A stretch of DNA of 64,000 bases from Macrostomum lignano (taxonomy: Eukaryota): contig NIVC01000330.1 in the NCBI GenBank assembly GCA_002269645.1, forward strand, positions 248,001 to 312,000, read 5' to 3'. Under the pieces are notes generated by a model, which was not told where the DNA came from, searched no databases, and worked only from the letters and a program-made list of their open reading frames with translations. This document shows positions 40,477 to 63,423 of this stretch, in pieces. The translations under genes were made by a program, and so were the position numbers. The stretch's first letter is position 1; each line of letters opens with the position of its first letter.

Positions 40477-41574
40477 TCAAGCTGTGGTCCCGCTAAGATC
40501 GGCAGCGGCCCGCTTGAAGTAGGCGATAAGCCTGGCCAGGCCGGCACGGTAGTTCTCATCTGTGCCGCCGCCTGCATCTGTGGAAGTGGCTTCATCGCCG
40601 CTGACTTTTTCTGACGATGCATCGGCTCGGCACCGGTGCACGTGAGCGAAATCAACAGCTCGGACCACTACAGCGAAACCGGAGCAGTCAGAATCTTCCT
40701 GCGGCTGCTGCACAGGCGCCGCCTCGTAGGCGATGAGCAGCGAGCTGGCGTAGAACCGGAAGGACCGCTGCACGGCGAACCAGGCGTCCAGCTGCTCCAG
40801 TCTGGCGGCCACTGCGGAGGCCACGGCGCCGGCTCGGCCAGGAGACCCAGCCGCGGCCAGGAACGGCAGGAAGCCCTTGCTGTACACGGCCTCAGCATCC
40901 AGGGAGCGGCCGTGCAAGATGGAGTAGACTCGAGGCTCCGATCGGCCTATCAGCGGCACCCGGAAGCCCGTGATGACGAAGCCCAGCTGGCCCCGGTGCG
41001 TGTACATCGCCCGCTGCAGCAGCCGCTTGGAGGCCGGGGCGCCCGGCGGGGCTGACAGGCCGCCCATCTTGCAGTCCATCACGCACGGTCTGCGAAGGTG
41101 CTTCAAGGCGTCGCCGAGTCCCAGGTACAGCTGCCCGCCTCCCTGCCGACATCTGTACAGCCCGAGGAAGTCGGCAAGGAACGGCCGCAGTCCCTCCAAC
41201 ACTGGCGAGTCGGCATTGCTGCCGGCGGCGGCCGCCGCTCGATAGAAGGCCACCTCGCGAGGTCCCTTTGGCGGCCGCTGCACCGGCTTGTACAGATCGC
41301 CGGACTGGCCGGACAGAATCGGCGACTTCCGCCAGAACAGCAGGCCCTTGCCGCCCACCTGGTGCGAGTACTCGGTCAGGCCTGCTGGCAGGTCCTGCAC
41401 CTCCGGCTGCTGCCGCTTCTGCTGTTCGTCATCCTCTTGGACATCAAAAACTGCCGTCGTCTCCGCCAGCTCCCGCTGCTGACTGTTCTCGCAGCAGCCG
41501 CTGCTGGCGGCCTTCCACCGGGTAGCAATGGGGACGGCGCTGCTGGCGGACGCAGCCGGTTGAATGGCAACGGT
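40477..41574 (-). CDS. IPMK: Inositol polyphosphate multikinase (IPK2/Arg82 family), main exon
   Basis: Motifs SHQVGG, PPKGPREVAFY, PCVMDCKMG (PxxxDxKxG), FYASSLL, VDFAH and DENYRAGLARLI. The frame stays open to an acceptor (tttcctcaacag) at 41575, giving 1098 nt. PRE..FY and FYASSLL favour IPMK over IP6K. Confidence 0.88.
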   Translation of the reverse strand, partial: TVAIQPAASASSAVPIATRWKAASSGCCENSQQRELAETTAVFDVQEDDEQQKRQQPEVQDLPAGLTEYSHQVGGKGLLFWRKSPILSGQSGDLYKPVQRPPKGPREVAFYRAAAAAGSNADSPVLEGLRPFLADFLGLYRCRQGGGQLYLGLGDALKHLRRPCVMDCKMGGLSAPPGAPASKRLLQRAMYTHRGQLGFVITGFRVPLIGRSEPRVYSILHGRSLDAEAVYSKGFLPFLAAAGSPGRAGAVASAVAARLEQLDAWFAVQRSFRFYASSLLIAYEAAPVQQPQEDSDCSGFAVVVRAVDFAHVHRCRADASSEKVSGDEATSTDAGGGTDENYRAGLARLIAYFKRAAADLSGTTA

Positions 41575-41638
41575 CTGTTGAGGAAATCGCCTTCACAATT
41601 AAGTGTCTCTCCGGTCAGGCAGGATGCCGCGCTGTGAC

Positions 41639-43990: not shown

Positions 43991-44649
43991 ATCTTCCTGT
44001 CTCTGAATTTGCAGTGCATTACCGCAATAAAAAAATCGATACACTCTACTAGGCAAGCAATAGCGTCAGTAGTCACTATAGAGCATAAATCTAATCTATT
44101 AGATGCCGCGTTGGGAATTCCTGGAAATCAGAAAAATAATTGGATTTGAAGCAAAAATATTGACTTCATTTCGAGAAATATGAAGAAGAGCCCCGAGGGA
44201 GATTTCTCCTGAAAAAAATTGCATTTGCGAAAATTTGGAGGAAAGCTGAGCAGACTACTCATTCGCTTTGCGACAAAGACGTCATCAATTCTAAGTGGGA
44301 AGATTCTAAACTTTGTCAAAAATTCCGAGTTTCAATTTGTACTTGTCGGCCATGGCTTTGACCGAATGGGGAACGGGGCTGATCGATGAGGCGCTGAGGC
44401 TGAGACGCTCTGCGACTCTTTTAGATTGCTGCAAAAACTTGCAGTAAGAAATATTTTTGCTTCAAGCCACCGGAACTTTTTTCACGTAAAGAGCGGAAAC
44501 TGATGATTGATGCCCGTAGCAGTTATTAATTAGGGAGAAAAACTCAAGGAGAAAACCTGCCAAAAGTGGAGAATTGACAGCTTTGCCGGCCTTCGATCTG
44601 ACAGACACCGCAATTGCAGTTTTGTGAATGCGGGAGAAGCTTTGTGCCG

Positions 44650-46017
<1,368 letters not shown>

Positions 46018-46677
46018 GTTGCAATCGCCTTTTCTGTCAAAACATCTGTTTTCATAATTTCACGTTGCCCATTGCTGTTTGTTTTTGAGCAGAAAAAACT
46101 GCCTCAGATGGTCATTTAATCCCGGAATCAGATGCCGCCCCAAACCCCTGCTTAATCAGGAAGTGAAGCCGTGGGCTCATCCGTGAAACTGAATTTTTAA
46201 GTTTTCAACAGTGGCCACACAGCTTGCCGACTTTCACATTTTTGTTCGATGATAAATTTGTTTTCAAAGTGGAATATAAATGAGAATACTCTGAAGGTCA
46301 ACTCTTCAGACTTCTGTTCTCCCGCCTGGCTTGCCGTATCCCGCAGCGGCAGTTGGGAATATCTGAGAGCCGCCGGGGCACTTTCCAGCGAATCAAATTG
46401 GTGCAGAAAGGCAACGGAGAGCCTGACATCGGGATGAAGAGAGATGGGAGGTTGGGAGAGAGCGGGGAAAGCAGCAGATCTTCGAATCCCCTGCTTTTCC
46501 TGAATGCGTGCTCATCGCCTTTCTTGCCCCGGCTCCAAGTTTCAGCAGCCAGAGATGATCGGCCTGTTTGCCTCCGGCCCGCAGCGCAGGGCAGCGCGAG
46601 CAGAGAAGGCAAACCGGAGGGATCAATTCCTCAACTTTACTCTGGGTGGTCCTGGGATGCGTGCTTATTCACTTGGA

Positions 46678-47573
<896 letters not shown>

Positions 47574-47884
47574 TATAAAATCCTCATGTATGCGACCTCC
47601 TTGACCTGAATTCCATGAGAATATCTGCTCCTGGTCCGTGCCACTCTGTGCCCAATTCGATTAGTGGTTGGCTCGAAGAGTTACTTCACTATGCGAACTT
47701 TATCTTATTTTTTTCCAGCGGAAACTTTGATGGGATTGGGAAGGAGAGAGAAGTACACCAGGGGATGCAGACGGCTCCTCTGGTGGTGGTGAATTATTTA
47801 GCATTTCGCAGCTGCAACGACTTGGACTATGCATCAAATTTTGATGCCCAGATGCTCGGTGTTTTGAGGCTGTAATTTTCCCGT

Positions 47885-50383: not shown

Positions 50384-50874
50384 AGTTACCTCCATTTTAA
50401 CCAATGATCTCATATCCCTGTTTTTTAATAGTTCACGCCGTGAGAACCAACCCGAAACCCTCTCAGCTACCCCCCGGTCCGCCATTGGTCAGTGAGTGGA
50501 TTGGCTTTAAAGGCAGATTTAGACGCTTGGATGAAGCATTTCGGCTTCGACACAATCAGCTGCAACGCTTCACCAAGATTCGCTTAAAGGACTCTGACAA
50601 AATCAATAAAGTCTTAGACGCGCCAGAAATGCGACGAAGCATTTTAGGATTCTGGCTCTGCGCCCAGCTGCTTCATCAGCTCTGCGGAGTCTGCTTGGTG
50701 AGGCCGCGCAGATCTGTGGTGTTGAAATCCGATTCAGTTTAGAAGAGTGATCTTTGTATTCCCAAATTTTATATTCCTGCCAACTTATCTTCTCCTAGCC
50801 ACCTCAGGTACTCAGATTTTCGATCCTTGCTGCTATCGGCGCATTTGTTTAAAACTTCTCTCCTTTAGCCTGCT

Positions 50875-53348: not shown

Positions 53349-54506
53349 GTTAGGTAGATTGATAAACTGATAAATTCGGTGCCCTGAAAATACTGCGAGT
53401 CTCTGCGCGCATCCCCATCTATATTTAAAACTCTTCAAATGGAGTTCAGAAAGTCCAAGCAGAGGTACAAAATTAGATCAAGAAGGGCTTAAGCAGCCGC
53501 ATCAGCTGCACACGAACATCCGGGATTCTCAAAAAGATAAATCCAATCCAGCTACTGATAGCCACCATCTGCTTGCCTCTCTCTCACCAGATGCGAGTGC
53601 CAACTCAAGATGATGGATAGAAGCTGACAGGTGATAAACAGGCTCTTGTTTCTTCAGAACAAAACTTTCTTAGAAGTTTTTGTTAGAAACAGCTCACAGA
53701 AAGTGCAAAACTGAAGGGGACATGCATACCCCCTAGCCAGAAACTTATTTTTTCACTCTCTTTATTCCATCCCTATTCCATCATTTATACGCCAAAAAGC
53801 CACCTGTCGAAAATCCCACACAGCCAGATGACGAATAAGGAGACCGGAGCCTCTCCTGTCAAATCCTGGGATAAAATCGCGGCAGAAAAGGACTTTACAC
53901 ACTGTACTTGATTCTGACTGGACTGGGATTCGCAAGCACAGATGCTGGATTGTAGGGCGGGGACAGTGATGAAGGAGGCAGCTGGAGATTTGCCGGTTGG
54001 AGAGGGATGGTAAAAGGGATTCCGTAGACTAGTGGTCCAGCGCGGCGCTTGAGAACCAACCCCCAAGGCACAGTGAAGTGTACATACCTAGCGATAAATA
54101 AAGTTAGGGCCGCTGTACACTCCTGTGTGAGTGTGTGCCTGCGCGTATGACTGCGTACGTGTCCGCGCGCTTGTGTGCCTGCTCATGGGAGTCGGCGAAA
54201 TGGGCAGCAATGCCTCTCGCCGGTAGTGCGACAATGTCGCTTAAAGTGCACCAAGGTGCCCCCTGCCTCAAAAAAGAGGGGTGGTTGAAGAGACTGAAGG
54301 GCGCTAGAAGGGAATGAAGGGCGCTAGAAGGGAATGAATGGCGCTAGAAGGGAATGAAGGGCGCTAGAAGGGAATGAATGGCGCCAGAAGGAACCAAAAG
54401 GCGAAGAAAGATAAAATAACTTTAGTAAGGAAAAGATGGGACATCAGTGAGAGATGGAGACGGATGCTGAATAGCATGAACCCCCCCCCCTTTACTCTCA
54501 TACCAG

Positions 54507-54935
54507 CTGGCTGGAGCCGTGGCCGCCTCCTCGCCAACGGAAGCGGAAGAGGAGCTCCGGCGCCAGGAGGCGGCCTGCTCAGTCCAGACTGTCCGATCGG
54601 CGGCGTTCCGCTTGCTGGCCGCGCTGGACGGCGGCTCCGCCTCGTCGTCTCGGCGGCGATTCTGCCCGGCCGCATTCGACGGATTCGCCTGCTGGCCGCG
54701 CACCCCGGCGGGAGCCGAGGCCCGCGTGCCCTGCCCGACGCCTGTCTTCGAGAGCGGCGGCTTCGCCTGGCGTCGCTGCCAGCCAGACGGCCGTTGGGAA
54801 TTCCCGGCCTCGGCTGCATCGCCGGCGGTGGCTTCGGCGTTGCGTAACTCGACAGCGTCAATGGTGATTGGCAGCTCGTATAGCAACTACAGCGCCTGCC
54901 GGTCAAAGGAATCGTTCGATTATTTGGCTAAACGG
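54507..54935 (+). CDS. Class B1 GPCR, hormone-receptor ectodomain exon A (EAAC...FCPAAFDGFACWPRTPAG...VPCP...GFAWRRCQPDGRW...SNYSAC...DYLAKR)
   Basis: All six HRM cysteines plus the FD, CWP and GxW motifs. Acceptor ctctcataccag, donor gtgcgt; 429 nt, phase 0-0. Confidence 0.88.
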
Positions 54936-54964
54936 GTGCGTCTTTCTTCCAAGTTGCGGCTTGC

Positions 54965-55940
54965 GCTTCTCGCACTCGGATTCTTTGAATTCGCACTCAG
55001 ATTCTTGGAATTCACACTCGGATTCTTTGAATTCGCACTCGGATTCTTTGAATTCGCACTCGGATTCTTGGAATTCGCACTCAGATTCTTTGAATTCGCA
55101 CTCAGATTCTTGGAATTCACACTCGGATTCTTTGAATTCGCACTCGGATTCTTTGAATTCGCACTCGGATTCTTTGAATTCGCACTCGGATTCTTTGAAT
55201 TCGCACTCAGATTCTTTGAATTCACACTCGGATTATTTGAATTCGCACTCAGATTCTTGGAATTCACACTCGGATTCTTGGAATTCGCACTCGGATTCTT
55301 TGAATTCGCACTCAGATTCTTGGAATTCGCACTCGGATTCTTGGAATTCGCACTCGGATTCTTGGAATTCGCACTCGGATTCTTTGAATTCGCACTCAGA
55401 TTCTTGGAATTCGCACTCGGATTCTTGGAATTCGCACTCGGATTCTTTGAATTCGCACTCAGATTCTTGGAATTCGCACTCGGATTCTTTGAATTCGCAC
55501 TCGGATTCTTGGAATTCGCACTCGGATTCTTTGAATTCGCACTCAGATTCTTGGAATTCGCACTCGGATTCTTTGAATTCGCACTCAGATTCTTTGAATT
55601 CGCACTCAGATTCTTGGAATTCGCACTCGGATTCTTTGAATTCGCACTCAAATTCTTGGAATTCGCACTCGGATTCTTGGAATTCGCACTCGGATTCTTG
55701 GAATTCGCACTCGGATTCTTGGAATTCGCACTCGGATTCTTTGAATTCGCACTCAGATTCTTGGAATTCGCACTCGGATTCTTGGAATTCGCACTCGGAT
55801 TCTTTGAATTCGCACTCAGATTCTTGGAATTCGCACTCGGATTCTTGGAATTCGCACTCGGATTCTTGGAATTCGCACTCGGATTCTTTGAATTCGCACT
55901 CGGATTCTTGGAATTCGCACGCGGATTCTTGGAATTCTCA
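54965..55940. repeat. 21-bp minisatellite (gaattcgcactcggattcttK), intronic
   Basis: About 46 copies, starting ~30 nt after the exon A donor. Confidence 0.95.
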
Positions 55941-55959
55941 CTTGGATTCCTAGAGTGGC

Positions 55960-56810
55960 CCACTCTGATCTCTGTGGGTTGCACTCTGATCCCTGTGAGT
56001 TGCACTCTGATCCCTATGGATTGCACTCTGATCCCTGTGGGTTGCACTCTGATCCCTATGGATTGCACTCTGATTCCTGTGGTTGCACTCTGATTCCTGT
56101 GGTTGCACTCTGATCCCTGTGGGTTGCACTCTGATCCCTGGGGGTTGCACTCTGATCCCTGGGGGTTGCACTCTGATCTCTATGGATTGCACTCTAATCC
56201 CTATGGATTGCACTCTGATCTCTATGGATTGCACTCTGATCCCTATGGATTGCACTCTAATCCCTATGGATTGCACTCTGATCTCTATGGATTGCACTCT
56301 GATCCCTATGGATTGCACTCTGATCCCTGTGGTTGCACTCTGATATCCCTATGGATTGCACTCTGATCCCTATGGGTTGCACTCTGATCAATATGAGTTG
56401 AACTCTGATCCCTGGGGGTTGCACTCTGATCCCTGTGGGTTGCACTCTGATCCCTATGAATTGCACTCTGATCCCTATGGATTGCACTCTGATTTCTATG
56501 GATTGCACTCTTATTCCTATGGGTTGCACTCTGATCCCTGGGGGTTGCACTCTGATCCCTGTGGGTTGCACTCTGATCCCTATGAATTGCACTCTGATCC
56601 CTATGAATTGCACTCTGATCCCTATGAATTGCACTCTGATCCCTATGGATTGCACTCTGATTTCTATGGATTGCACTCTTATTCCTATGGGTTGCACTCT
56701 GATCCCTGGGGGTTGCACTCTGATCAATATGGGTTGCACTCTGATCCCTGGGGGTTGCACTCTGATCCCTATGGATTGCACTCTGATCTTTATGGATTGC
56801 ACTCTGATTA
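55960..56810. repeat. ~21-bp minisatellite (gcactctgatccctatggatt), adjacent to and related to the previous array
   Basis: About 40 copies sharing the gcactc core. Confidence 0.93.
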
Positions 56811-58734
56811 ATAGAACTAGCACTGCGTAGTGTGAGGTTGCTATGAGAGTTAATTTTTTAACTAGCAGGTATGAAAAGCACTAATGAATATTGCTACTCT
56901 TGATAGGACTAGATTAGCAATCAAAGTAGTCCCAAATCCGCAACACGCAAATCCAATCCGAAAATCCCAGTGAGCCATAGTGTTCCCATAATCTCTCGAG
57001 ACTAATCGTTAGAGAATGGAACTTGGTCCCGCACTGACTGACTGCGCTGGCCACAGCCACTTGTTGACTTTGGAAAACTCCAGAGAGCTGATGAGAGTTC
57101 TCTGTCGGAGAGAGAGGAAGTTTTTTTGATTAAGAGCTCCGACCGTTGTGTTTGCATTATGCCACCTGTTTAGGCAGAGAGCCGATTTCCCCTTTCTATT
57201 CGTCTCTCCTGTTTTTAAAGCCGCTCAAAGGCAGAGCTCAGGTGAAGGTATCGAATTGATACTTCCTATCTAGTGGCTCTTTAGTTTGCAGCTATAGCCA
57301 CCCCCCTTCCCAAGGGGGTGCAATCAATAAATATTCACACGAGAGCTGCGGGCAACCCTCTAGTATCTCTGGTTTTTTAGCAGCGAGACCGCACCCCTAA
57401 CTGCAGCACCAGCTGGAGAGCAACTAGGCAGAGTGCGTCCGACCCTCGCCTGACCACGATCAGAAAGTCAGGACAAGCTGTACACCTCTCGATAGCCAGA
57501 ACTTTCTCCTGCAGAAACTACTGACCTTTCCTGCTGTCTGCATCGTGAAAGAAAGCTCAGCCTCCCTGCCCTGTTCTCTGAGCGGCTGTTTCTGTACGCT
57601 CGTCTACTATATGCCTACGGCGAGAATCGCGATAATTTTGCCTTTGATCTTCTCCAACTGCTAATATCAGAATTCTCTTCCCCATCCTCAATCTGTTTCT
57701 ATGCGAGTTCCTTCATAAACGACTTCTTTTCCTTTGCAAGTGTTTGGCACATGCGAGTGCCCGGGCGAACAGAATCCTGATGAAGCAGCGATGGCCGAAG
57801 CCCCCTACCCCAGGCAGACACCCGCTGCACCTCTTCAGCACACCGAATTTAAGCCAGGCCAAACAGAGCCTTGTCAAGAAATTGATGCAGCGAAAGAATT
57901 TCTGCTTCCCATCTTCCAGTCCGCACCGTTTCCTTCTACGCAATTCAAATTTCTTCCCAAAAGACCTTTCTTGCTCTTCGTTGCGGCTTAGCATTTGCCT
58001 GACCAGTTTGCCGAGCAAATACCTGATGGGCCTCTGGTGGGCCTCTCTCGCTTCCCTCTGCTTCACGTCAATCGACAAATAGCCCTCCCCCAGCCTCCCC
58101 GCCTCTCCATCATCCTAGTCTCTCCTACCTCTACACCGCACGGTTTAGGCTGGTTGCTCCGGTCTCTTCTTCTCAACTGAGTCTCCGCACCCGTCAGACA
58201 GGCAAAAACCTGAGGCAGATGGGTAGGCTTGTGCCAACCTGTCTGCTCCAAAGGATTGCTGCTTCTTTGCAAGGATGGATGGCTGATAGACAGAGCTTTC
58301 CCCTAGAGTGGAAAAGGAAGCAAAACATTTGGACGCTGAGCAGAATTTGAGTGCCAGTCGGGTAGGGAAGGGCAATGCAAGCAGACAGATGACAAATGGG
58401 CCACCTGGTTACTTAATATTCTTCGCTCAGAGAAGCCTAGAAAAAGTTCATCTTAACGGAATTTTGCAGAGTCAAGCTATGATATTGTTTTTTAATTATA
58501 CAGCTGCGAACGTGTAGGTGTCCGTGGATAAATACTCGTATTGGCCACGAGAGTCAAGGCCGCTGTGTGAGCGTGTGTCGTTGTATCCATATGCGTTTGC
58601 CCAGATTTCTTGCTCCATTGCAAACACACTGACTGACTGCTAAAGATAATTAATCCCATGCTGTTTAAAATAAATGAACACTTTCAAGGCTTCTATGACG
58701 GATTTTTTCACCAGCTGAACCTCCCAAATTCCAG

Positions 58735-59070
58735 CTGCAAGTGACCAAGGTGTCCAAGATGCTGCAGTACAAGCGCTTGGAGCTGGAGAACCGCACCTGT
58801 CAGGCCCTGATTGAAGACGCCATGGCCGCCAATGCCACCGGCTGTCTGCCAACCTTCGACAACGCCATCTGTTGGCCTGGAGTTCCCGCTGGCACTCGAG
58901 TGTACATGTCCTGTCCCGACTATGTCAACGAGCTCAACAGGCGGGGCTTCGCCTGGCGGCGTTGCCTTGGCAATGGCAGCTGGCACCGACCGGCTGGCAA
59001 GCCCGGCCGCGGAGAGGGCTGGACCAATTTCACCGCCTGCTCAGTGAGCGACCCGCCCAGCACTGCACTG
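58735..59070 (+). CDS. Class B1 GPCR, hormone-receptor ectodomain exon B (ENRTC...GCLPTFDNAICWPGVPAG...SCPDYVNELNRRGFAWRRCLGNGSW...WTNFTAC...STAL)
   Basis: Six HRM cysteines; the CPDY...G.A.RRC..NGSW...W.N...C pattern recalls PTH-receptor-like ectodomains. Phase-0 acceptor at 58735 (an in-frame phase-1 acceptor also exists at 58715); donor gtgagc. Confidence 0.9.
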
Positions 59071-59089
59071 GTGAGCGGCTGGGCCGGGC

Positions 59090-59500
59090 TTGGGGCTGCT
59101 AATTACCGTGCCCGACTCTGGTGTAGGCTGAGGTGGGGCTGCTAATTACCGTGCCCGACTCTGGTGTAGGCTGAGGTGGGGCTGCTAATTACCGTGCCCG
59201 ACTCTGGTGTAGGCTGAGGTGGGGCTGCTAATTACCGTGCCCGAATCAGGTGCAGGCTGAGATGGGGCTGCTAATTACCGTGCCCGAATCAGGTGTAGGC
59301 TGGGGTGGGGCTGCTAATTATCGTGCCTGAATCAGGTGTAGGCTGGGGTGGGGCTGCTAATTATCGTGCCCGAATCAGGTGTAGGCTGAGGTGGGGCTGC
59401 TAATTATCGTGCCGAAATCAGATGAGGGCTGAGGTGGGGCTGCTAATTACCGTGCCTGAATCAGATGCAGGCTGAGGTGGGGCTTCTAATTACCGTGCCC
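59090..59500. repeat. 43-bp minisatellite, intronic
   Basis: About 9-10 copies of gctgctaattaccgtgcccg...aggctgaggtggg. Confidence 0.93.
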
Positions 59501-59596
59501 AACCTGAAGCATACTTTTGTGCCTCAGGTAGGCAAGCCCTGTTCAACTTTAATCAATTTTGTTCAACTTCTTCATTCCTACACTGCCATCGAGTAG

Positions 59597-59685
59597 CTCA
59601 GGGTGATTCACAGCATCGGTCACATTGGCTACGGCATCTCCCTAGTGTTTCTGCTATTGGCAATCAGCATCTTGGCCTGTTTCAG
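59597..59685 (+). CDS. Class B1 GPCR, TM1 exon (LRVIHSIGHIGYGISLVFLLLAISILACF)
   Basis: GYxxSL TM1 motif; phase 0 to 2; donor gtgagc. Confidence 0.9.
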
Positions 59686-59799
59686 GTGAGCTGGCAACTA
59701 TAAACTGTACCCTTTTTAATCCTTTCTGACGCCGGTGCCCAGGGACGCGTCCTGTGGCGCTGTTTCTATAAGACCTGACAGCGTACTTTTTGACAGCGC

Positions 59800-60346
59800 A
59801 GTCTAAATCATACAGCCAGTGTGACTCACGCAGTCTAAATCATACAGCCAGTGTGACTCACGCAGTCTAAATCATACAGCCAGTGTGACTCACGCAGTCT
59901 AAATCATACAGCCAGTGTGACTCACACAGTCTAAATCATACAGCCAGTGTGACTCACACAGTCTAAATCATACAGCCAGTGTGACTCATGAAGTCTAAAT
60001 CATACAGCCAGTGTGACTCACGCAGTCTAAATCATACAGCCAGTGTGACTCATGCAGTCTCACTCATACAGCCAGTGTGACTCACGCAGTCCCACTCATA
60101 CAGCCAGTGTGACTCACGCAGTCTGACTCATACAGCCAGTGTGACTCACGCAGTCTCACTCATACAGCCAGTGTGACTCACGCAGTCCCACTCATACAGC
60201 CAGTGTGACTCACGCAGTCTGACTCATACAGCCAGTGTGACTCACGCAGTCTCACTCATACAGCCAGTGTGACTCACGCAGTCTCACTCATACAGCCAGT
60301 GTGACTCACGCAGTCTCATTCATACAGCCAGTGTGACTCACGCAGT
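59800..60346. repeat. 32-bp minisatellite (gtgtgactcacgcagtctMaMtcatacagcca), intronic
   Basis: About 17 copies ending ~18 nt before the TM2 exon. Confidence 0.95.
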
Positions 60347-60364
60347 CGGCTTCACAATTTTCAG

Positions 60365-60470
60365 ACGCCTGCACTGCCAAAAGAACTTCATTCACATCAA
60401 TCTGTTTCTGGCATTCTCGCTCAAGGCGGTCAGCCATTTCTTAAATTATTTCGCTTCAGTTGAGAACATG
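60365..60470 (+). CDS. Class B1 GPCR, ICL1-TM2 exon (RLHCQKNFIHINLFLAFSLKAVSHFLNYFASVENM)
   Basis: Family signature RRLHCxxNxIHxNLF; phase 2 to 0; donor gtgagt. Confidence 0.93.
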
Positions 60471-60548: not shown

Positions 60549-60708
60549 GTTGTCATCTGCCGCTCTCATCAGACCCTGCTAACCTACAGTGTCATCGCAA
60601 GCTTCACCTGGGTATTCGTGGAGGCCCTGCACCTGTACATGCTGATCTTTGTGAACACCATGTCCGGGTCGAAGATGTCCACGCCTTTTTACATGCTGAT
60701 TGGATGGG
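60549..60708 (+). CDS. Class B1 GPCR, TM3-ICL2-TM4 exon (VVICRSHQTLLTYSVIASFTWVFVEALHLYMLIFV...FYMLIGW)
   Basis: ECL1/TM3 Cys, W..VE.L.LY and IGWG motifs; follows a 78-nt intron; phase 0 to 1. Confidence 0.93.
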
Positions 60709-60767: not shown

Positions 60768-61217
<450 letters not shown>

Positions 61218-61519: not shown

Positions 61520-62095
61520 GTCAGAGGGAGACAGAGGGGGACACAGACAGACAGAGACAGACAGAGACAGACAGAGACAGTCAGAGGGAGACAGACACAG
61601 ACAGAGGGAGACAGACACAGACAGAGGGAGACAGACACAGACAGAGGGAGACAGACACAGACAGAGGGAGACAGACACAGACAGAGGGAGACAGACACAG
61701 ACAGAGGGAGACAGACACAGACAGAGGGAGACAGACACAGACAGAGGGAGACAGACACAGACAGAGGGAGACAGACACAGACAGAGGGAGACAGACACAG
61801 ACAGAGGGAGACAGACACAGACAGAGGGAGACAGACACAGACAGAGGGAGACAGACACAGACAGAGGGAGACAGACACAGACAGAGGGAGACAGACACAG
61901 ACAGAGGGAGACAGACACAGACAGAGGGAGACAGACACAGACAGGGGGAGACAGACACAGACAGAGGGAGACAGACACAGACAGAGGGAGACAGACACAG
62001 ACAGAGGGAGACAGACACAGACAGAGGGAGACAGACACAGACAGTGGGAGACAGACACAGACAGAGGGAGACAGACACATACAGAGGGAGACAGA
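61520..62095. repeat. 20-bp repeat (gacagagggagacagacaca)
   Basis: About 28 copies. Confidence 0.95.
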
Positions 62096-62719: not shown

Positions 62720-62853
62720 GCGCTCCATGCCTCTTCACCGGCATCTGGGTGGCGCTGCGGCTCCGGCTGGACAATCGGGAGTGCTGGCGCAAGTACATGC
62801 CGATGGGCGCTGACATCTGGCTGGTGAACGTCTACCTCTGCCTGCTCGTGTTC
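62720..62853 (+). CDS. Class B1 GPCR, TM4-ECL2-TM5 exon (GAPCLFTGIWVALRLRLDNRECWRKYMPMGADIWLVNVYLCLLVF)
   Basis: Completes the GWGxP motif across the junction; ECL2 CW; phase 1 to 0; donor gtgagt. Confidence 0.92.
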
Positions 62854-63331: not shown

Positions 63332-63423
63332 GTGAACGCCGGCCTGTTCGCCCGAATAGTTCGCGAGCTGTTTGTTAAAATGAGGAACCAACCGCTGAGC
63401 AGCGCTGCGACGCAGAATTATCG
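63332..63423 (+). CDS. Class B1 GPCR, TM5-ICL3 exon (VNAGLFARIVRELFVKMRNQPLSSAATQNY); TM6-7 lie beyond the window
   Basis: N...F.RIVR.L..K.R motif; acceptor tctcccgcag, donor gtgaga; phase 0 to 2. Confidence 0.92.

What the first reader, a model, noticed from the sequence alone, without database searches (positions are those of the whole stretch)
54507..59685. Class B1 GPCR with two complete, divergent hormone-binding ectodomain exons feeding one 7TM core
Seen: two separate exons (54507-54935 and 58735-59070) each encode a full six-Cys HRM domain with intact FD, CWP, CP and GxW motifs. Both end in phase 0 about 10-12 residues after the last Cys, and the TM1 exon starts in phase 0. No TM exons were found between them. 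They share GFAWRRC but otherwise differ strongly; B looks PTHR-like (CPDY...NGSW...WTNF.AC) and A has the FDG..CWP.TPAG pattern common in CRF/calcitonin-type receptors. Known: secretin-family receptors normally have one ECD, which captures the peptide C-terminus and sets much of the ligand selectivity. Inference: exon duplication created swappable ectodomains (A-TM or B-TM) or a tandem A-B-TM receptor. A-B splicing is in frame via 58735, and B has a second in-frame phase-1 acceptor at 58715 that could take its own leader exon. One signalling core could thus read two different neuropeptides.
Basis: partly seen in the sequence, partly recalled or inferred. Interest (0 to 1): 0.88.

Follow-up and report, generated by a model that had tools for sequence, protein, structure and literature searches.

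The report
Flatworm hormone receptor with two ectodomains
The window holds a Macrostomum lignano parathyroid-hormone-receptor-like GPCR gene with two hormone-binding-domain exons before a single seven-helix core, most likely joined in series, a layout already seen in other animals' receptors and already in a public gene model.

Summary
Exon A (54507-54935) and exon B (58735-59070) each encode a complete six-cysteine HRM domain (Pfam 49.7 and 61.2 bits). Both are phase 0 at both ends, and only one set of 7TM exons follows them.

The locus is Macrostomum lignano. UniProt A0A1I8IK20 contains A+B exactly and already joins 54935>58735, but it mis-models TM1 and TM4.

The 7TM core and exon B are PTH-receptor-like. 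The nearest full relatives (annelid, mollusc, tick) have a single HRM. B is the canonical membrane-proximal domain. A is a more derived distal domain with longer loops.

HRM-HRM-7tm_2 proteins exist elsewhere: arthropod calcitonin-receptor-like proteins, a fly PDF-receptor-like protein, and a teleost calcitonin receptor with four HRMs. The best reading is therefore a tandem A-B-7TM receptor, a new member of a known kind.

The "swappable ectodomain" reading is in frame and not excluded, but it has no positive support. I found no transcript evidence. Junction reads from public M. lignano RNA-seq would settle the question.

A candidate signal-peptide exon lies at 50629-50697.

The parts
50629..50697 (+). 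Candidate first coding exon (inferred): MRRSILGFWLCAQLLHQLCGVCL, signal-peptide-like, donor TTG|GTGAGG, phase 0
   Evidence: This is the only ATG-led, strongly hydrophobic candidate with a consensus GTGAG donor in phase 0 between 41.7 and 54.5 kb (sequence). It reads in frame into A, or into B. It has no homology or RNA support.
54476..54490 (+). ATG followed by a C10 homopolymer just upstream of exon A; with 9 Cs this ATG would be in frame with A
   Evidence: Read from the sequence. It matters only if the homopolymer length is an assembly error.
54507..54935 (+). Exon A: distal HRM domain (HRM1) with its own N-terminal helix and a 12-residue tail; 143 codons, phase 0 at both ends
   Evidence: Pfam HRM 49.7 bits. 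It is identical to residues 1-143 of UniProt A0A1I8IK20. GC3 is 0.78. Its loops are longer than in B or the relatives: C1-C2 is 29 aa and C5-C6 is 40 aa.
54936..58734 (+). Intron A-B (3.8 kb): two 21-nt minisatellite arrays (54970-55949, 55961-56808) followed by about 1.9 kb of unique sequence
   Evidence: TRF. No class B exon is found there. The ORFs there have no Pfam hit. No signal-peptide leader candidate with a consensus donor is found.
58715..58734 (+). Alternative phase-1 acceptor extension of exon B
   Evidence: caccag|CTGAACCTCCCAAATTCCAG|CTG, open in frame. No evidence of use.
58735..59070 (+). Exon B: membrane-proximal, canonical HRM domain (HRM2); 112 codons, phase 0 at both ends
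   Evidence: Pfam HRM 61.2 bits. The best solved relative is PTH1R ECD at 62.5 bits. C1-C2 spacing is 15 aa, as in the single-HRM relatives. The acceptor TTCCAG fits the M. lignano [T/C]TNCAG motif (PMC8629364).
59597..59685 (+). TM1 exon (LRVIHSIGHIGYGISLVFLLLAISILACF-R), starts in phase 0
   Evidence: Pfam 7tm_2 fragment; splice sites. This exon is skipped in the public model P0023.
60365..60470 (+). TM2 exon (RLHCQKNFIHINLF...)
60549..60708 (+). TM3 exon up to GWG
62720..62853 (+). TM4/ECL2/TM5 exon
   Evidence: The public model reads this exon in the wrong frame.
63332..63423 (+). TM5-end/ICL3 exon; the gene continues past the window end
   Evidence: With these exons plus the C-terminus from P0023, 7tm_2 scores 183.2 bits in one stretch covering 5-250 of 250, against 83.9 bits in two pieces for the public model.

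Best explanation
This is the 5' two-thirds of a Macrostomum lignano class B1 GPCR gene of the PTH-receptor-like group. Its extracellular part is built from two consecutive HRM exons. The most likely main product is a tandem receptor: signal peptide (candidate exon 50629-50697), then distal HRM (A), then a helical linker formed by A's tail and B's N-terminal helix, then the canonical membrane-proximal HRM (B), then the 7TM core.

B does the usual class B1 job of capturing the peptide's C-terminal part next to the 7TM core. A is an extra, more derived HRM that could add a second contact, bind an accessory partner, or tune or mask access. The functions of A and B are inferred. The architecture rests on exon geometry, an existing gene model and precedent in other lineages, not on transcripts.
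For: 1. Both exons are intact HRMs with symmetric phase 0 and lengths divisible by 3, so A-B-TM1 is in frame.
2. UniProt A0A1I8IK20 (M. lignano, n=2) contains A+B exactly, with the 54935>58735 junction. Pfam sees HRM x2 + 7tm_2 in it.
3. The tandem architecture is real elsewhere. RefSeq and GenBank calcitonin-receptor-like proteins of Penaeus, Nymphon, Ischnura, Centruroides and Cloeon are HRM x2 + 7tm_2. A Condylostylus PDF-receptor-like protein is HRM x2. The Stegastes calcitonin receptor is HRM x4.
4. The division of labour matches those receptors. Their HRM1 matches A much better than B (for example 32.1 vs 10.4, 38.5 vs 14.4 and 33.9 vs 12.5 bits). In most of them HRM2 matches B at least as well as A. 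B has canonical cysteine spacing and adds about 94 bits to a profile of PTHR-like relatives; A adds about 72 bits.
5. A keeps all conserved HRM positions and the gene's GC3 bias (0.78) despite only about 47% identity to B. This argues for long-term selection on A as coding sequence.
6. If A's donor is unused, its frame runs 385 more codons through a minisatellite. No other coding exon lies between A and B, so A must splice to B or to TM1.
7. No signal-peptide leader exon is found between A and B. One good candidate lies upstream of A.
Against: - No transcript evidence could be obtained.
- The public model with the A>B junction is an automatic prediction that is demonstrably wrong at TM1 and TM4, so its A>B join may be ab initio.
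- A second public model (P0001) starts exactly at 58735, without A.
- The closest full-length relatives (Owenia, Mactra, Haliotis, ticks; about 36% identity) have a single HRM, so the second HRM has no orthologous precedent in this subfamily.
- A's donor GTGCGT departs from the GTGAG used by every other exon of the gene.
- A's tail fits the relatives' pre-TM1 stalk motif slightly better than B's tail, by 2-3 bits.
Confidence: 0.55

Rival explanations
1. Alternative ectodomain use. A and B are chosen alternatively, or B (or A) is a cassette exon. One 7TM core would then be made as A-TM, B-TM and/or A-B-TM isoforms with different ligand selectivity.
For: All three combinations are in frame, and the candidate leader is phase 0 and fits both acceptors. 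Each exon carries a full ECD unit of N-terminal helix with C1, HRM and a 10-12-residue tail. A's tail ...ESFDYLAKR followed by LRVIHS... resembles the relatives' stalk ([DE][HY][LFIM]x[KR] before the TM1 exon) and scores 2-3 bits better than B's tail. One public model starts at B without A.
Against: Joint inclusion does not break the frame, so nothing enforces exclusivity. The exon lengths differ (429 vs 336 nt). The only inverted repeat flanking B (58208-58230 / 59507-59529, 23 nt, 78%) is at chance level. The tail effect is only 2-3 bits. I know of no class B1 receptor that swaps whole HRM exons. The known multi-HRM receptors carry their HRMs in series within single predicted proteins.
Confidence: 0.2
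2. The receptor is B-7TM only. Exon B would be reached by SL trans-splicing, or from an unseen leader. Exon A would belong to a separate upstream transcript, for example a soluble HRM protein, possibly in an operon-like arrangement.
For: [quoted passage not shown] That ATG would be in frame at 58735, whose acceptor TTCCAG fits the trans-splice motif. P0001 starts exactly at 58735. AATAAA lies at 58669, 46-66 nt upstream of B's acceptors. HRM-only and non-GPCR HRM proteins exist, for example reeler+HRM P0040 and P0045, and they are among A's best core matches.
Against: SL-AUG + B gives no signal peptide. The acceptor motif is also common at cis sites, for example the TM2 acceptor TTTCAG. Two AATAAA/ATTAAA hexamers in 3.8 kb is what chance gives. 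No terminal exon or stop for an A-only protein is visible: A's frame stays open for 385 codons of minisatellite, and the ORFs in the intron have no family match.
Confidence: 0.13
3. Exon A is a non-functional relic of an old duplication and is not spliced into any mRNA.
For: A has no close homologue in the protein databases apart from the M. lignano model itself. It has longer low-complexity loops, a higher CpG o/e (1.19 vs 0.69) and an off-consensus donor. Open frames are cheap in 69% GC DNA; several other frames across A are also open.
Against: All six Cys and the D, W, P, G, W positions are intact. The Pfam score is nearly twice the gathering threshold, even though A is only about 47% identical to B. 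GC3 of 0.78 in the correct frame equals that of the other exons, and GC has sharp exon-like boundaries. Neutral decay over that divergence would be expected to have removed these features (inference).
Confidence: 0.08
4. Assembly artefact: A and B belong to two haplotypes or paralogues that were collapsed in series across the minisatellites.
For: The 3.8 kb between the exons includes 1.8 kb of 21-nt minisatellites. M. lignano is a hidden polyploid (PMC10468722 abstract).
Against: A and B are far too different (47% in the core) to be alleles or homeologues. The UniProt model, which carries an intron read-through and frame errors at TM1/TM4 that the window's own exon sequence does not force, also has A upstream of B in one gene. 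This is suggestive only, because I could not retrieve that model's source scaffold and cannot show that it comes from an independent assembly. No second set of 7TM exons is present.
Confidence: 0.03

Closest known systems
Protostome PTH-receptor-like class B1 GPCRs (e.g. Haliotis rubra XP_046553576, Dermacentor PTH/PTHrP receptor-like, Owenia fusiformis P0166, Mactra P0167; Schistosoma Smp_170560 in PMC3261222)
   Same: The 7TM core is most similar to PTH1R among solved structures (167.5 bits). B is most similar to the PTH1R ECD (62.5 bits). These proteins are the best full-length relatives at about 36% identity, and they share the IGYG(I/V)SL TM1 motif and the RRLHC...HINLF TM2 motif.
   Different: All the relatives examined have one HRM. 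The M. lignano gene has an additional HRM exon 3.8 kb upstream. I made no formal tree, so the subfamily assignment rests on similarity ranks only.
Arthropod calcitonin-receptor-like receptors with two HRMs (Penaeus indicus XP_063595561, Ischnura elegans XP_046396658, Centruroides vittatus XP_067131642, Cloeon dipterum CAB3372772, Nymphon striatum KAG1650523)
   Same: They have the HRM-HRM-7tm_2 architecture, a divergent distal HRM1 and a canonical proximal HRM2. Their HRM1 matches exon A better than exon B.
   Different: Their 7TM is calcitonin/CGRP-receptor type (FRSLxCxRIxLHKNLF). The window's 7TM matches them at 72-100 bits, against 133-181 bits for PTHR-like relatives, and CTR/CLR are not among the 60 best solved-structure hits shown. 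The second HRM therefore probably arose independently.
Teleost calcitonin receptor with multiple HRMs (Stegastes partitus XP_008287491, 4 HRMs)
   Same: Several HRM domains in series before one 7tm_2 core. From memory, Nag et al. 2007, Gen Comp Endocrinol 154:48, described this; only its title was checked, in the reference list seen.
   Different: It is a vertebrate calcitonin receptor, and its repeats are much more alike.
N-terminal splice variants of class B1 receptors (CRF2 alpha/beta/gamma alternative first exons; PAC1 ECD cassette) - from my own knowledge, not tested here
   Same: One 7TM core with alternative extracellular sequence. This is the nearest known analogue of the 'swappable' reading.
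   Different: Those variants change leader segments or short inserts, not a whole six-cysteine HRM domain. Nothing here shows that A and B are alternatives.

Membership tests
Class B1 (secretin-family) GPCR | 7tm_2 seven-helix core | tested here: met
   My exon model plus the C-terminus from P0023 gives PF00002 at 183.2 bits, in one stretch covering 5-250 of 250. Only TM1 to ICL3 lie inside the window.
Class B1 (secretin-family) GPCR | N-terminal HRM domain with six conserved cysteines | tested here: met
   Present twice: PF02793 at 49.7 bits (A) and 61.2 bits (B).
PTH-receptor-like subfamily | Closer to PTH receptors than to other class B1 subfamilies | tested here: inconclusive
   PTH1R is the top solved-structure hit for the 7TM (167.5 bits, vs GIPR 154 and VIPR1 147) and for B. 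PTH2R is the top hit for A. The nearest database relatives are annotated PTH/PTHrP receptor-like or secretin receptor-like. The margins are modest and I built no phylogeny.
Multi-HRM (tandem ectodomain) class B1 receptors | Two or more HRM domains in one polypeptide ahead of one 7tm_2 | not testable with these tools
   The genomic order, phases and the public prediction A0A1I8IK20 fit. The A>B junction needs RNA evidence, and none was retrievable.
Multi-HRM (tandem ectodomain) class B1 receptors | Canonical proximal HRM and divergent distal HRM | tested here: met
   B has canonical spacing and the higher scores. A has longer C1-C2 and C5-C6 loops. HRM1 of the arthropod receptors matches A much better than B.
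Mutually exclusive exon pair | Homologous neighbouring exons with the same phases | tested here: met
   Both are HRM exons and both are phase 0 at each end.
Mutually exclusive exon pair | A mechanism that prevents joint inclusion (frame break, steric limit, competing RNA pairing) | tested here: not met
   Joint inclusion is in frame. The introns are 3.8 kb and 526 nt. Only one chance-level inverted repeat was found.
Mutually exclusive exon pair | Transcripts that carry one exon or the other | not testable with these tools
SL trans-spliced gene of M. lignano | SL-containing reads at an acceptor with the [T/C]TNCAG motif | not testable with these tools
   The motif is present at 58735 (TTCCAG) and absent at 54507 (TACCAG). 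There are no read data.

The most novel reading that the evidence does not exclude
One PTH-receptor-like 7TM core is expressed with alternative whole ectodomains (A-TM, B-TM, A-B-TM), through exon skipping and/or spliced-leader trans-splicing at exon B. A single gene would then give receptors with different peptide selectivity. This would be the first case of whole-HRM swapping in a class B1 GPCR.
Probability: 0.2. Interest if true: 0.7.

Novelty: new member of a known kind. Interest (0 to 1): 0.3.

Why it matters
If the tandem reading holds, this adds a flatworm PTH-receptor-like receptor to the lineages that have placed a second HRM in front of a class B1 core, alongside arthropod calcitonin-type, a fly PDF-type and teleost calcitonin receptors. 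That would suggest repeated, independent gain of a distal hormone-binding domain. M. lignano is a transgenic model, so the role of the distal domain could be tested there.

Practically, the public gene models for this locus are wrong: TM1 is skipped, TM4 is out of frame and the 5' end is missing. They can be corrected with the exon coordinates given here.

The more exciting idea of swappable ectodomains is cheap to test with existing RNA-seq.

Tried and rejected
1. Word-indexed protein search with exon A alone gave nothing, even at E<=10. The full-length search scored only the 8000 candidates that shared most words. It missed P0001 and P0022, which one search had found. These negatives are therefore weak.
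2. I looked for transcripts or congeners' orthologues spanning A>B in the protein collections. None was found. P0023 has no contig on record.
3. I looked for other class B exons, a third HRM or a second 7TM set in the window. There are none.
4. A strict scan for leader exons between A and B found none. A relaxed scan found only a minisatellite-encoded candidate (56456) with a poor donor, which I rejected.
5. A search for RNA pairing that could loop out exon B found one 23-nt, 78% inverted repeat, about what chance gives.
6. The poly(A) hexamer count in the A-B intron is at chance level.
7. The idea that A is a recent local duplicate of B is not supported. A and B rank about 11th-12th among each other's matches, and AWRRC also occurs in a shrimp receptor.
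8. Literature searches for a published description of two-HRM calcitonin or PTH receptors found nothing explicit in the held library. The architecture claim therefore rests on Pfam scans of database proteins.
9. The bacterial-type promoter scan is irrelevant for a eukaryote and I ignored it.
10. I did not run structure prediction. Exon A would have had no usable alignment depth, and a model would not bear on the splicing.

Full report
**Observation.**
54507-54935 (143 codons) and 58735-59070 (112 codons) translate without stops. Each matches Pfam HRM (PF02793) over positions 2-64 of 66, at 49.7 and 61.2 bits against a gathering score of 26.2. Each has six cysteines and the FD, CWP, CP and GxW motifs.

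Both exons start after a pyrimidine tract plus CAG and end at a GT. Both lengths are multiples of three. The TM1 exon starts in phase 0 at 59597. The extra acceptor at 58715 is real and is phase 1. tblastn with 182 class B and HRM proteins finds only these two HRM loci and one set of 7TM exons in the whole window.

**Gene model.**
I place the 7TM exons at 59597-59685 (TM1), 60365-60470 (TM2), 60549-60708 (TM3), 62720-62853 (TM4 to TM5) and 63332-63423 (TM5 end and ICL3). All five have GTGAG donors. The gene runs off the 3' end of the window.

With these exons plus the C-terminal part from the public protein, Pfam 7tm_2 scores 183.2 bits in one stretch covering 5-250 of 250. Every intron holds a minisatellite, and TRF covers 46% of the window.

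**Source and existing annotation.**
The B+7TM query found a frameshift-ridden Macrostomum lignano UniRef protein (P0001) that starts exactly at LQVTKVSK, which is position 58735.

An exhaustive HMMER search with exon A found one near-identical protein, P0023 (E 2.5e-94). This is UniRef100_A0A1I8IK20 from M. lignano. It contains A+B exactly from its first residue, so it uses the 54935>58735 junction. Pfam sees HRM x2 + 7tm_2 in it.

That model is otherwise faulty. It reads from B into the intron, skips TM1 and reads the TM4 exon out of frame. The tandem architecture is therefore already in a public database, but only as an automatic, partly wrong prediction with no 5' end.

**Which receptor.**
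- Among solved structures, the 7TM core is closest to PTH1R (167.5 bits). GIPR scores 154 and VIPR1 147. CTR and CLR are not among the 60 best hits shown.
- B is closest to the PTH1R ECD (62.5 bits).
- A is closest to PTH2R (37.4 bits) and PTH1R (30.9 bits), against CLR 21.8 and CTR 18.3. A is therefore not calcitonin- or CRF-type.
- The best full-length relatives are Owenia, Mactra, a Logan transcript, Haliotis, Bradybaena, Watersipora and ticks. They are about 36% identical, and those with an informative name are called PTH/PTHrP receptor-like or secretin receptor-like. Every one I inspected has a single HRM.
- A PTH-receptor-like secretin-family GPCR was reported in Schistosoma (Smp_170560; PMC3261222).

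**Tandem HRMs elsewhere.**
Many of the next-best hits to exon A carry two or more HRMs. Pfam confirms these architectures:
- HRM x2 + 7tm_2 in calcitonin-receptor-like proteins of Penaeus, Nymphon, Ischnura, Centruroides and Cloeon.
- HRM x2 + 7tm_2 in a Condylostylus PDF-receptor-like protein.
- HRM x4 + 7tm_2 in the Stegastes calcitonin receptor.

In the arthropod receptors HRM1 matches A far better than B. In most of them HRM2 matches B at least as well as A.

In the window, B is the conservative copy. Its C1-C2 spacing is 15 residues, as in the relatives, and it adds about 94 bits to a profile of nine PTHR-like relatives. A is the derived copy. Its C1-C2 spacing is 29 residues, its C5-C6 spacing is 40 residues, and it adds about 72 bits. 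This is the pattern of a canonical membrane-proximal HRM with an added distal one.

**Is A a live exon?**
A is only about 47% identical to B in the core, yet it keeps every conserved HRM position. GC by codon position is 0.62/0.67/0.78 in A, and GC3 is 0.77 in both B and the TM exons. GC falls to 0.53 and 0.43 in A's flanks. I infer long-term selection on A as coding sequence.

If its donor is not used, its frame runs on for 385 codons of minisatellite. Nothing else that looks coding lies between A and B. A therefore most likely splices to B or to TM1.

**5' end.**
No signal-peptide-like ATG exon with a usable donor lies between A and B. Upstream of A there is one good candidate at 50629-50697: MRRSILGFWLCAQLLHQLCGVCL, donor GTGAGG, phase 0. 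It has no independent support.

An ATG at 54476 is followed by a C10 run and would be in frame with A only if the run were 9 Cs. The upstream neighbour is an inositol polyphosphate kinase gene on the other strand (40480-41592).

**Alternatives.**
A-TM1 and B-TM1 are also in frame.

Points that keep alternative usage alive:
- A's tail (ESFDYLAKR before LRVIHS...) fits the relatives' pre-TM1 motif 2-3 bits better than B's tail.
- P0001 starts at B.
- The M. lignano spliced leader ends in ATG, which would be in frame at 58735, and the acceptor there (TTCCAG) fits the reported trans-splice motif (PMC8629364).

Points against:
- Joint inclusion keeps the frame.
- The acceptor motif also occurs at cis sites.
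- SL-AUG + B has no signal peptide.
- The inverted repeat around B and the poly(A) hexamers are at chance level.

A local duplication origin of A from B cannot be shown. Each ranks about 11th-12th among the other's matches.

**Verdict.**
The finding is real, but it is best read as a tandem two-HRM PTH-receptor-like GPCR. That makes it a new member of a known kind of architecture, already present as a flawed public model. My confidence in the tandem reading is about 0.55. Alternative ectodomain use is about 0.2. The remainder is split between a B-only receptor with A in a separate transcript, a relic exon, and misassembly.

No transcript evidence was obtainable with these tools. Public M. lignano RNA-seq would decide the question at once.

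Noticed in passing
window 40480-41592 (-): A single 371-codon open frame encodes an inositol polyphosphate kinase (Pfam IPK, 99.5 bits). It is oriented divergently from the GPCR gene and bounds the GPCR's 5' region at about 41.7 kb.
   Followed up: partly
whole window; e.g. 54970-56808, 59091-59500, 59797-60347, 60769-61024, 61549-62095, 44534-46116, 46640-47600: 46% of the window is tandem repeat by TRF. Every intron of the GPCR gene contains a minisatellite (units of 20-43 nt) or a TCTA/GACA-type microsatellite. Several arrays stay open in all frames and produce long spurious ORFs.
   Followed up: partly
window 54476-54490: An ATG is followed by a C10 homopolymer immediately upstream of exon A. 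With 9 Cs it would give MNPPPLLSYQLAGAVAASSP... in frame with A, so a homopolymer-length error in the assembly would change the predicted start.
   Followed up: no
window 50629-50697 (+): A signal-peptide-like ATG exon (MRRSILGFWLCAQLLHQLCGVCL) with a consensus GTGAGG donor in phase 0 is a candidate first coding exon of the receptor. Neither public model includes it.
   Followed up: partly
window 59071-59133, 59597-59685, 62720-62853: The public M. lignano models are wrong here. A0A1I8IK20 reads 21 codons into the B-TM1 intron, skips the TM1 exon and reads the TM4 exon out of frame. The other model (P0001) is full of frameshifts.
   Followed up: yes
P0022 (M. lignano UniRef fragment), matches window 60552-60686: A divergent M. 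lignano paralogue fragment (69% identity over TM3, similar C-terminal half) exists. I could not determine whether it also has two HRM exons.
   Followed up: no
window 58208-58230 and 59507-59529: An inverted repeat of 23 nt (78% complementary) brackets exon B. It could loop the exon out, but the number found is about what chance gives.
   Followed up: partly
window 58669: An AATAAA hexamer lies 46-66 nt upstream of the two exon B acceptors, a spacing reminiscent of operon-type poly(A)/trans-splice junctions. The hexamer count in the intron is at chance level.
   Followed up: partly
P0024 (ENA, 1116 aa) and P0040 (Branchiostoma 'defense protein 3'): HRM domains also occur outside GPCRs: one protein has 20 HRM repeats and no 7TM, and another is a reeler+HRM secreted-type protein. 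Both are among exon A's better matches.
   Followed up: partly
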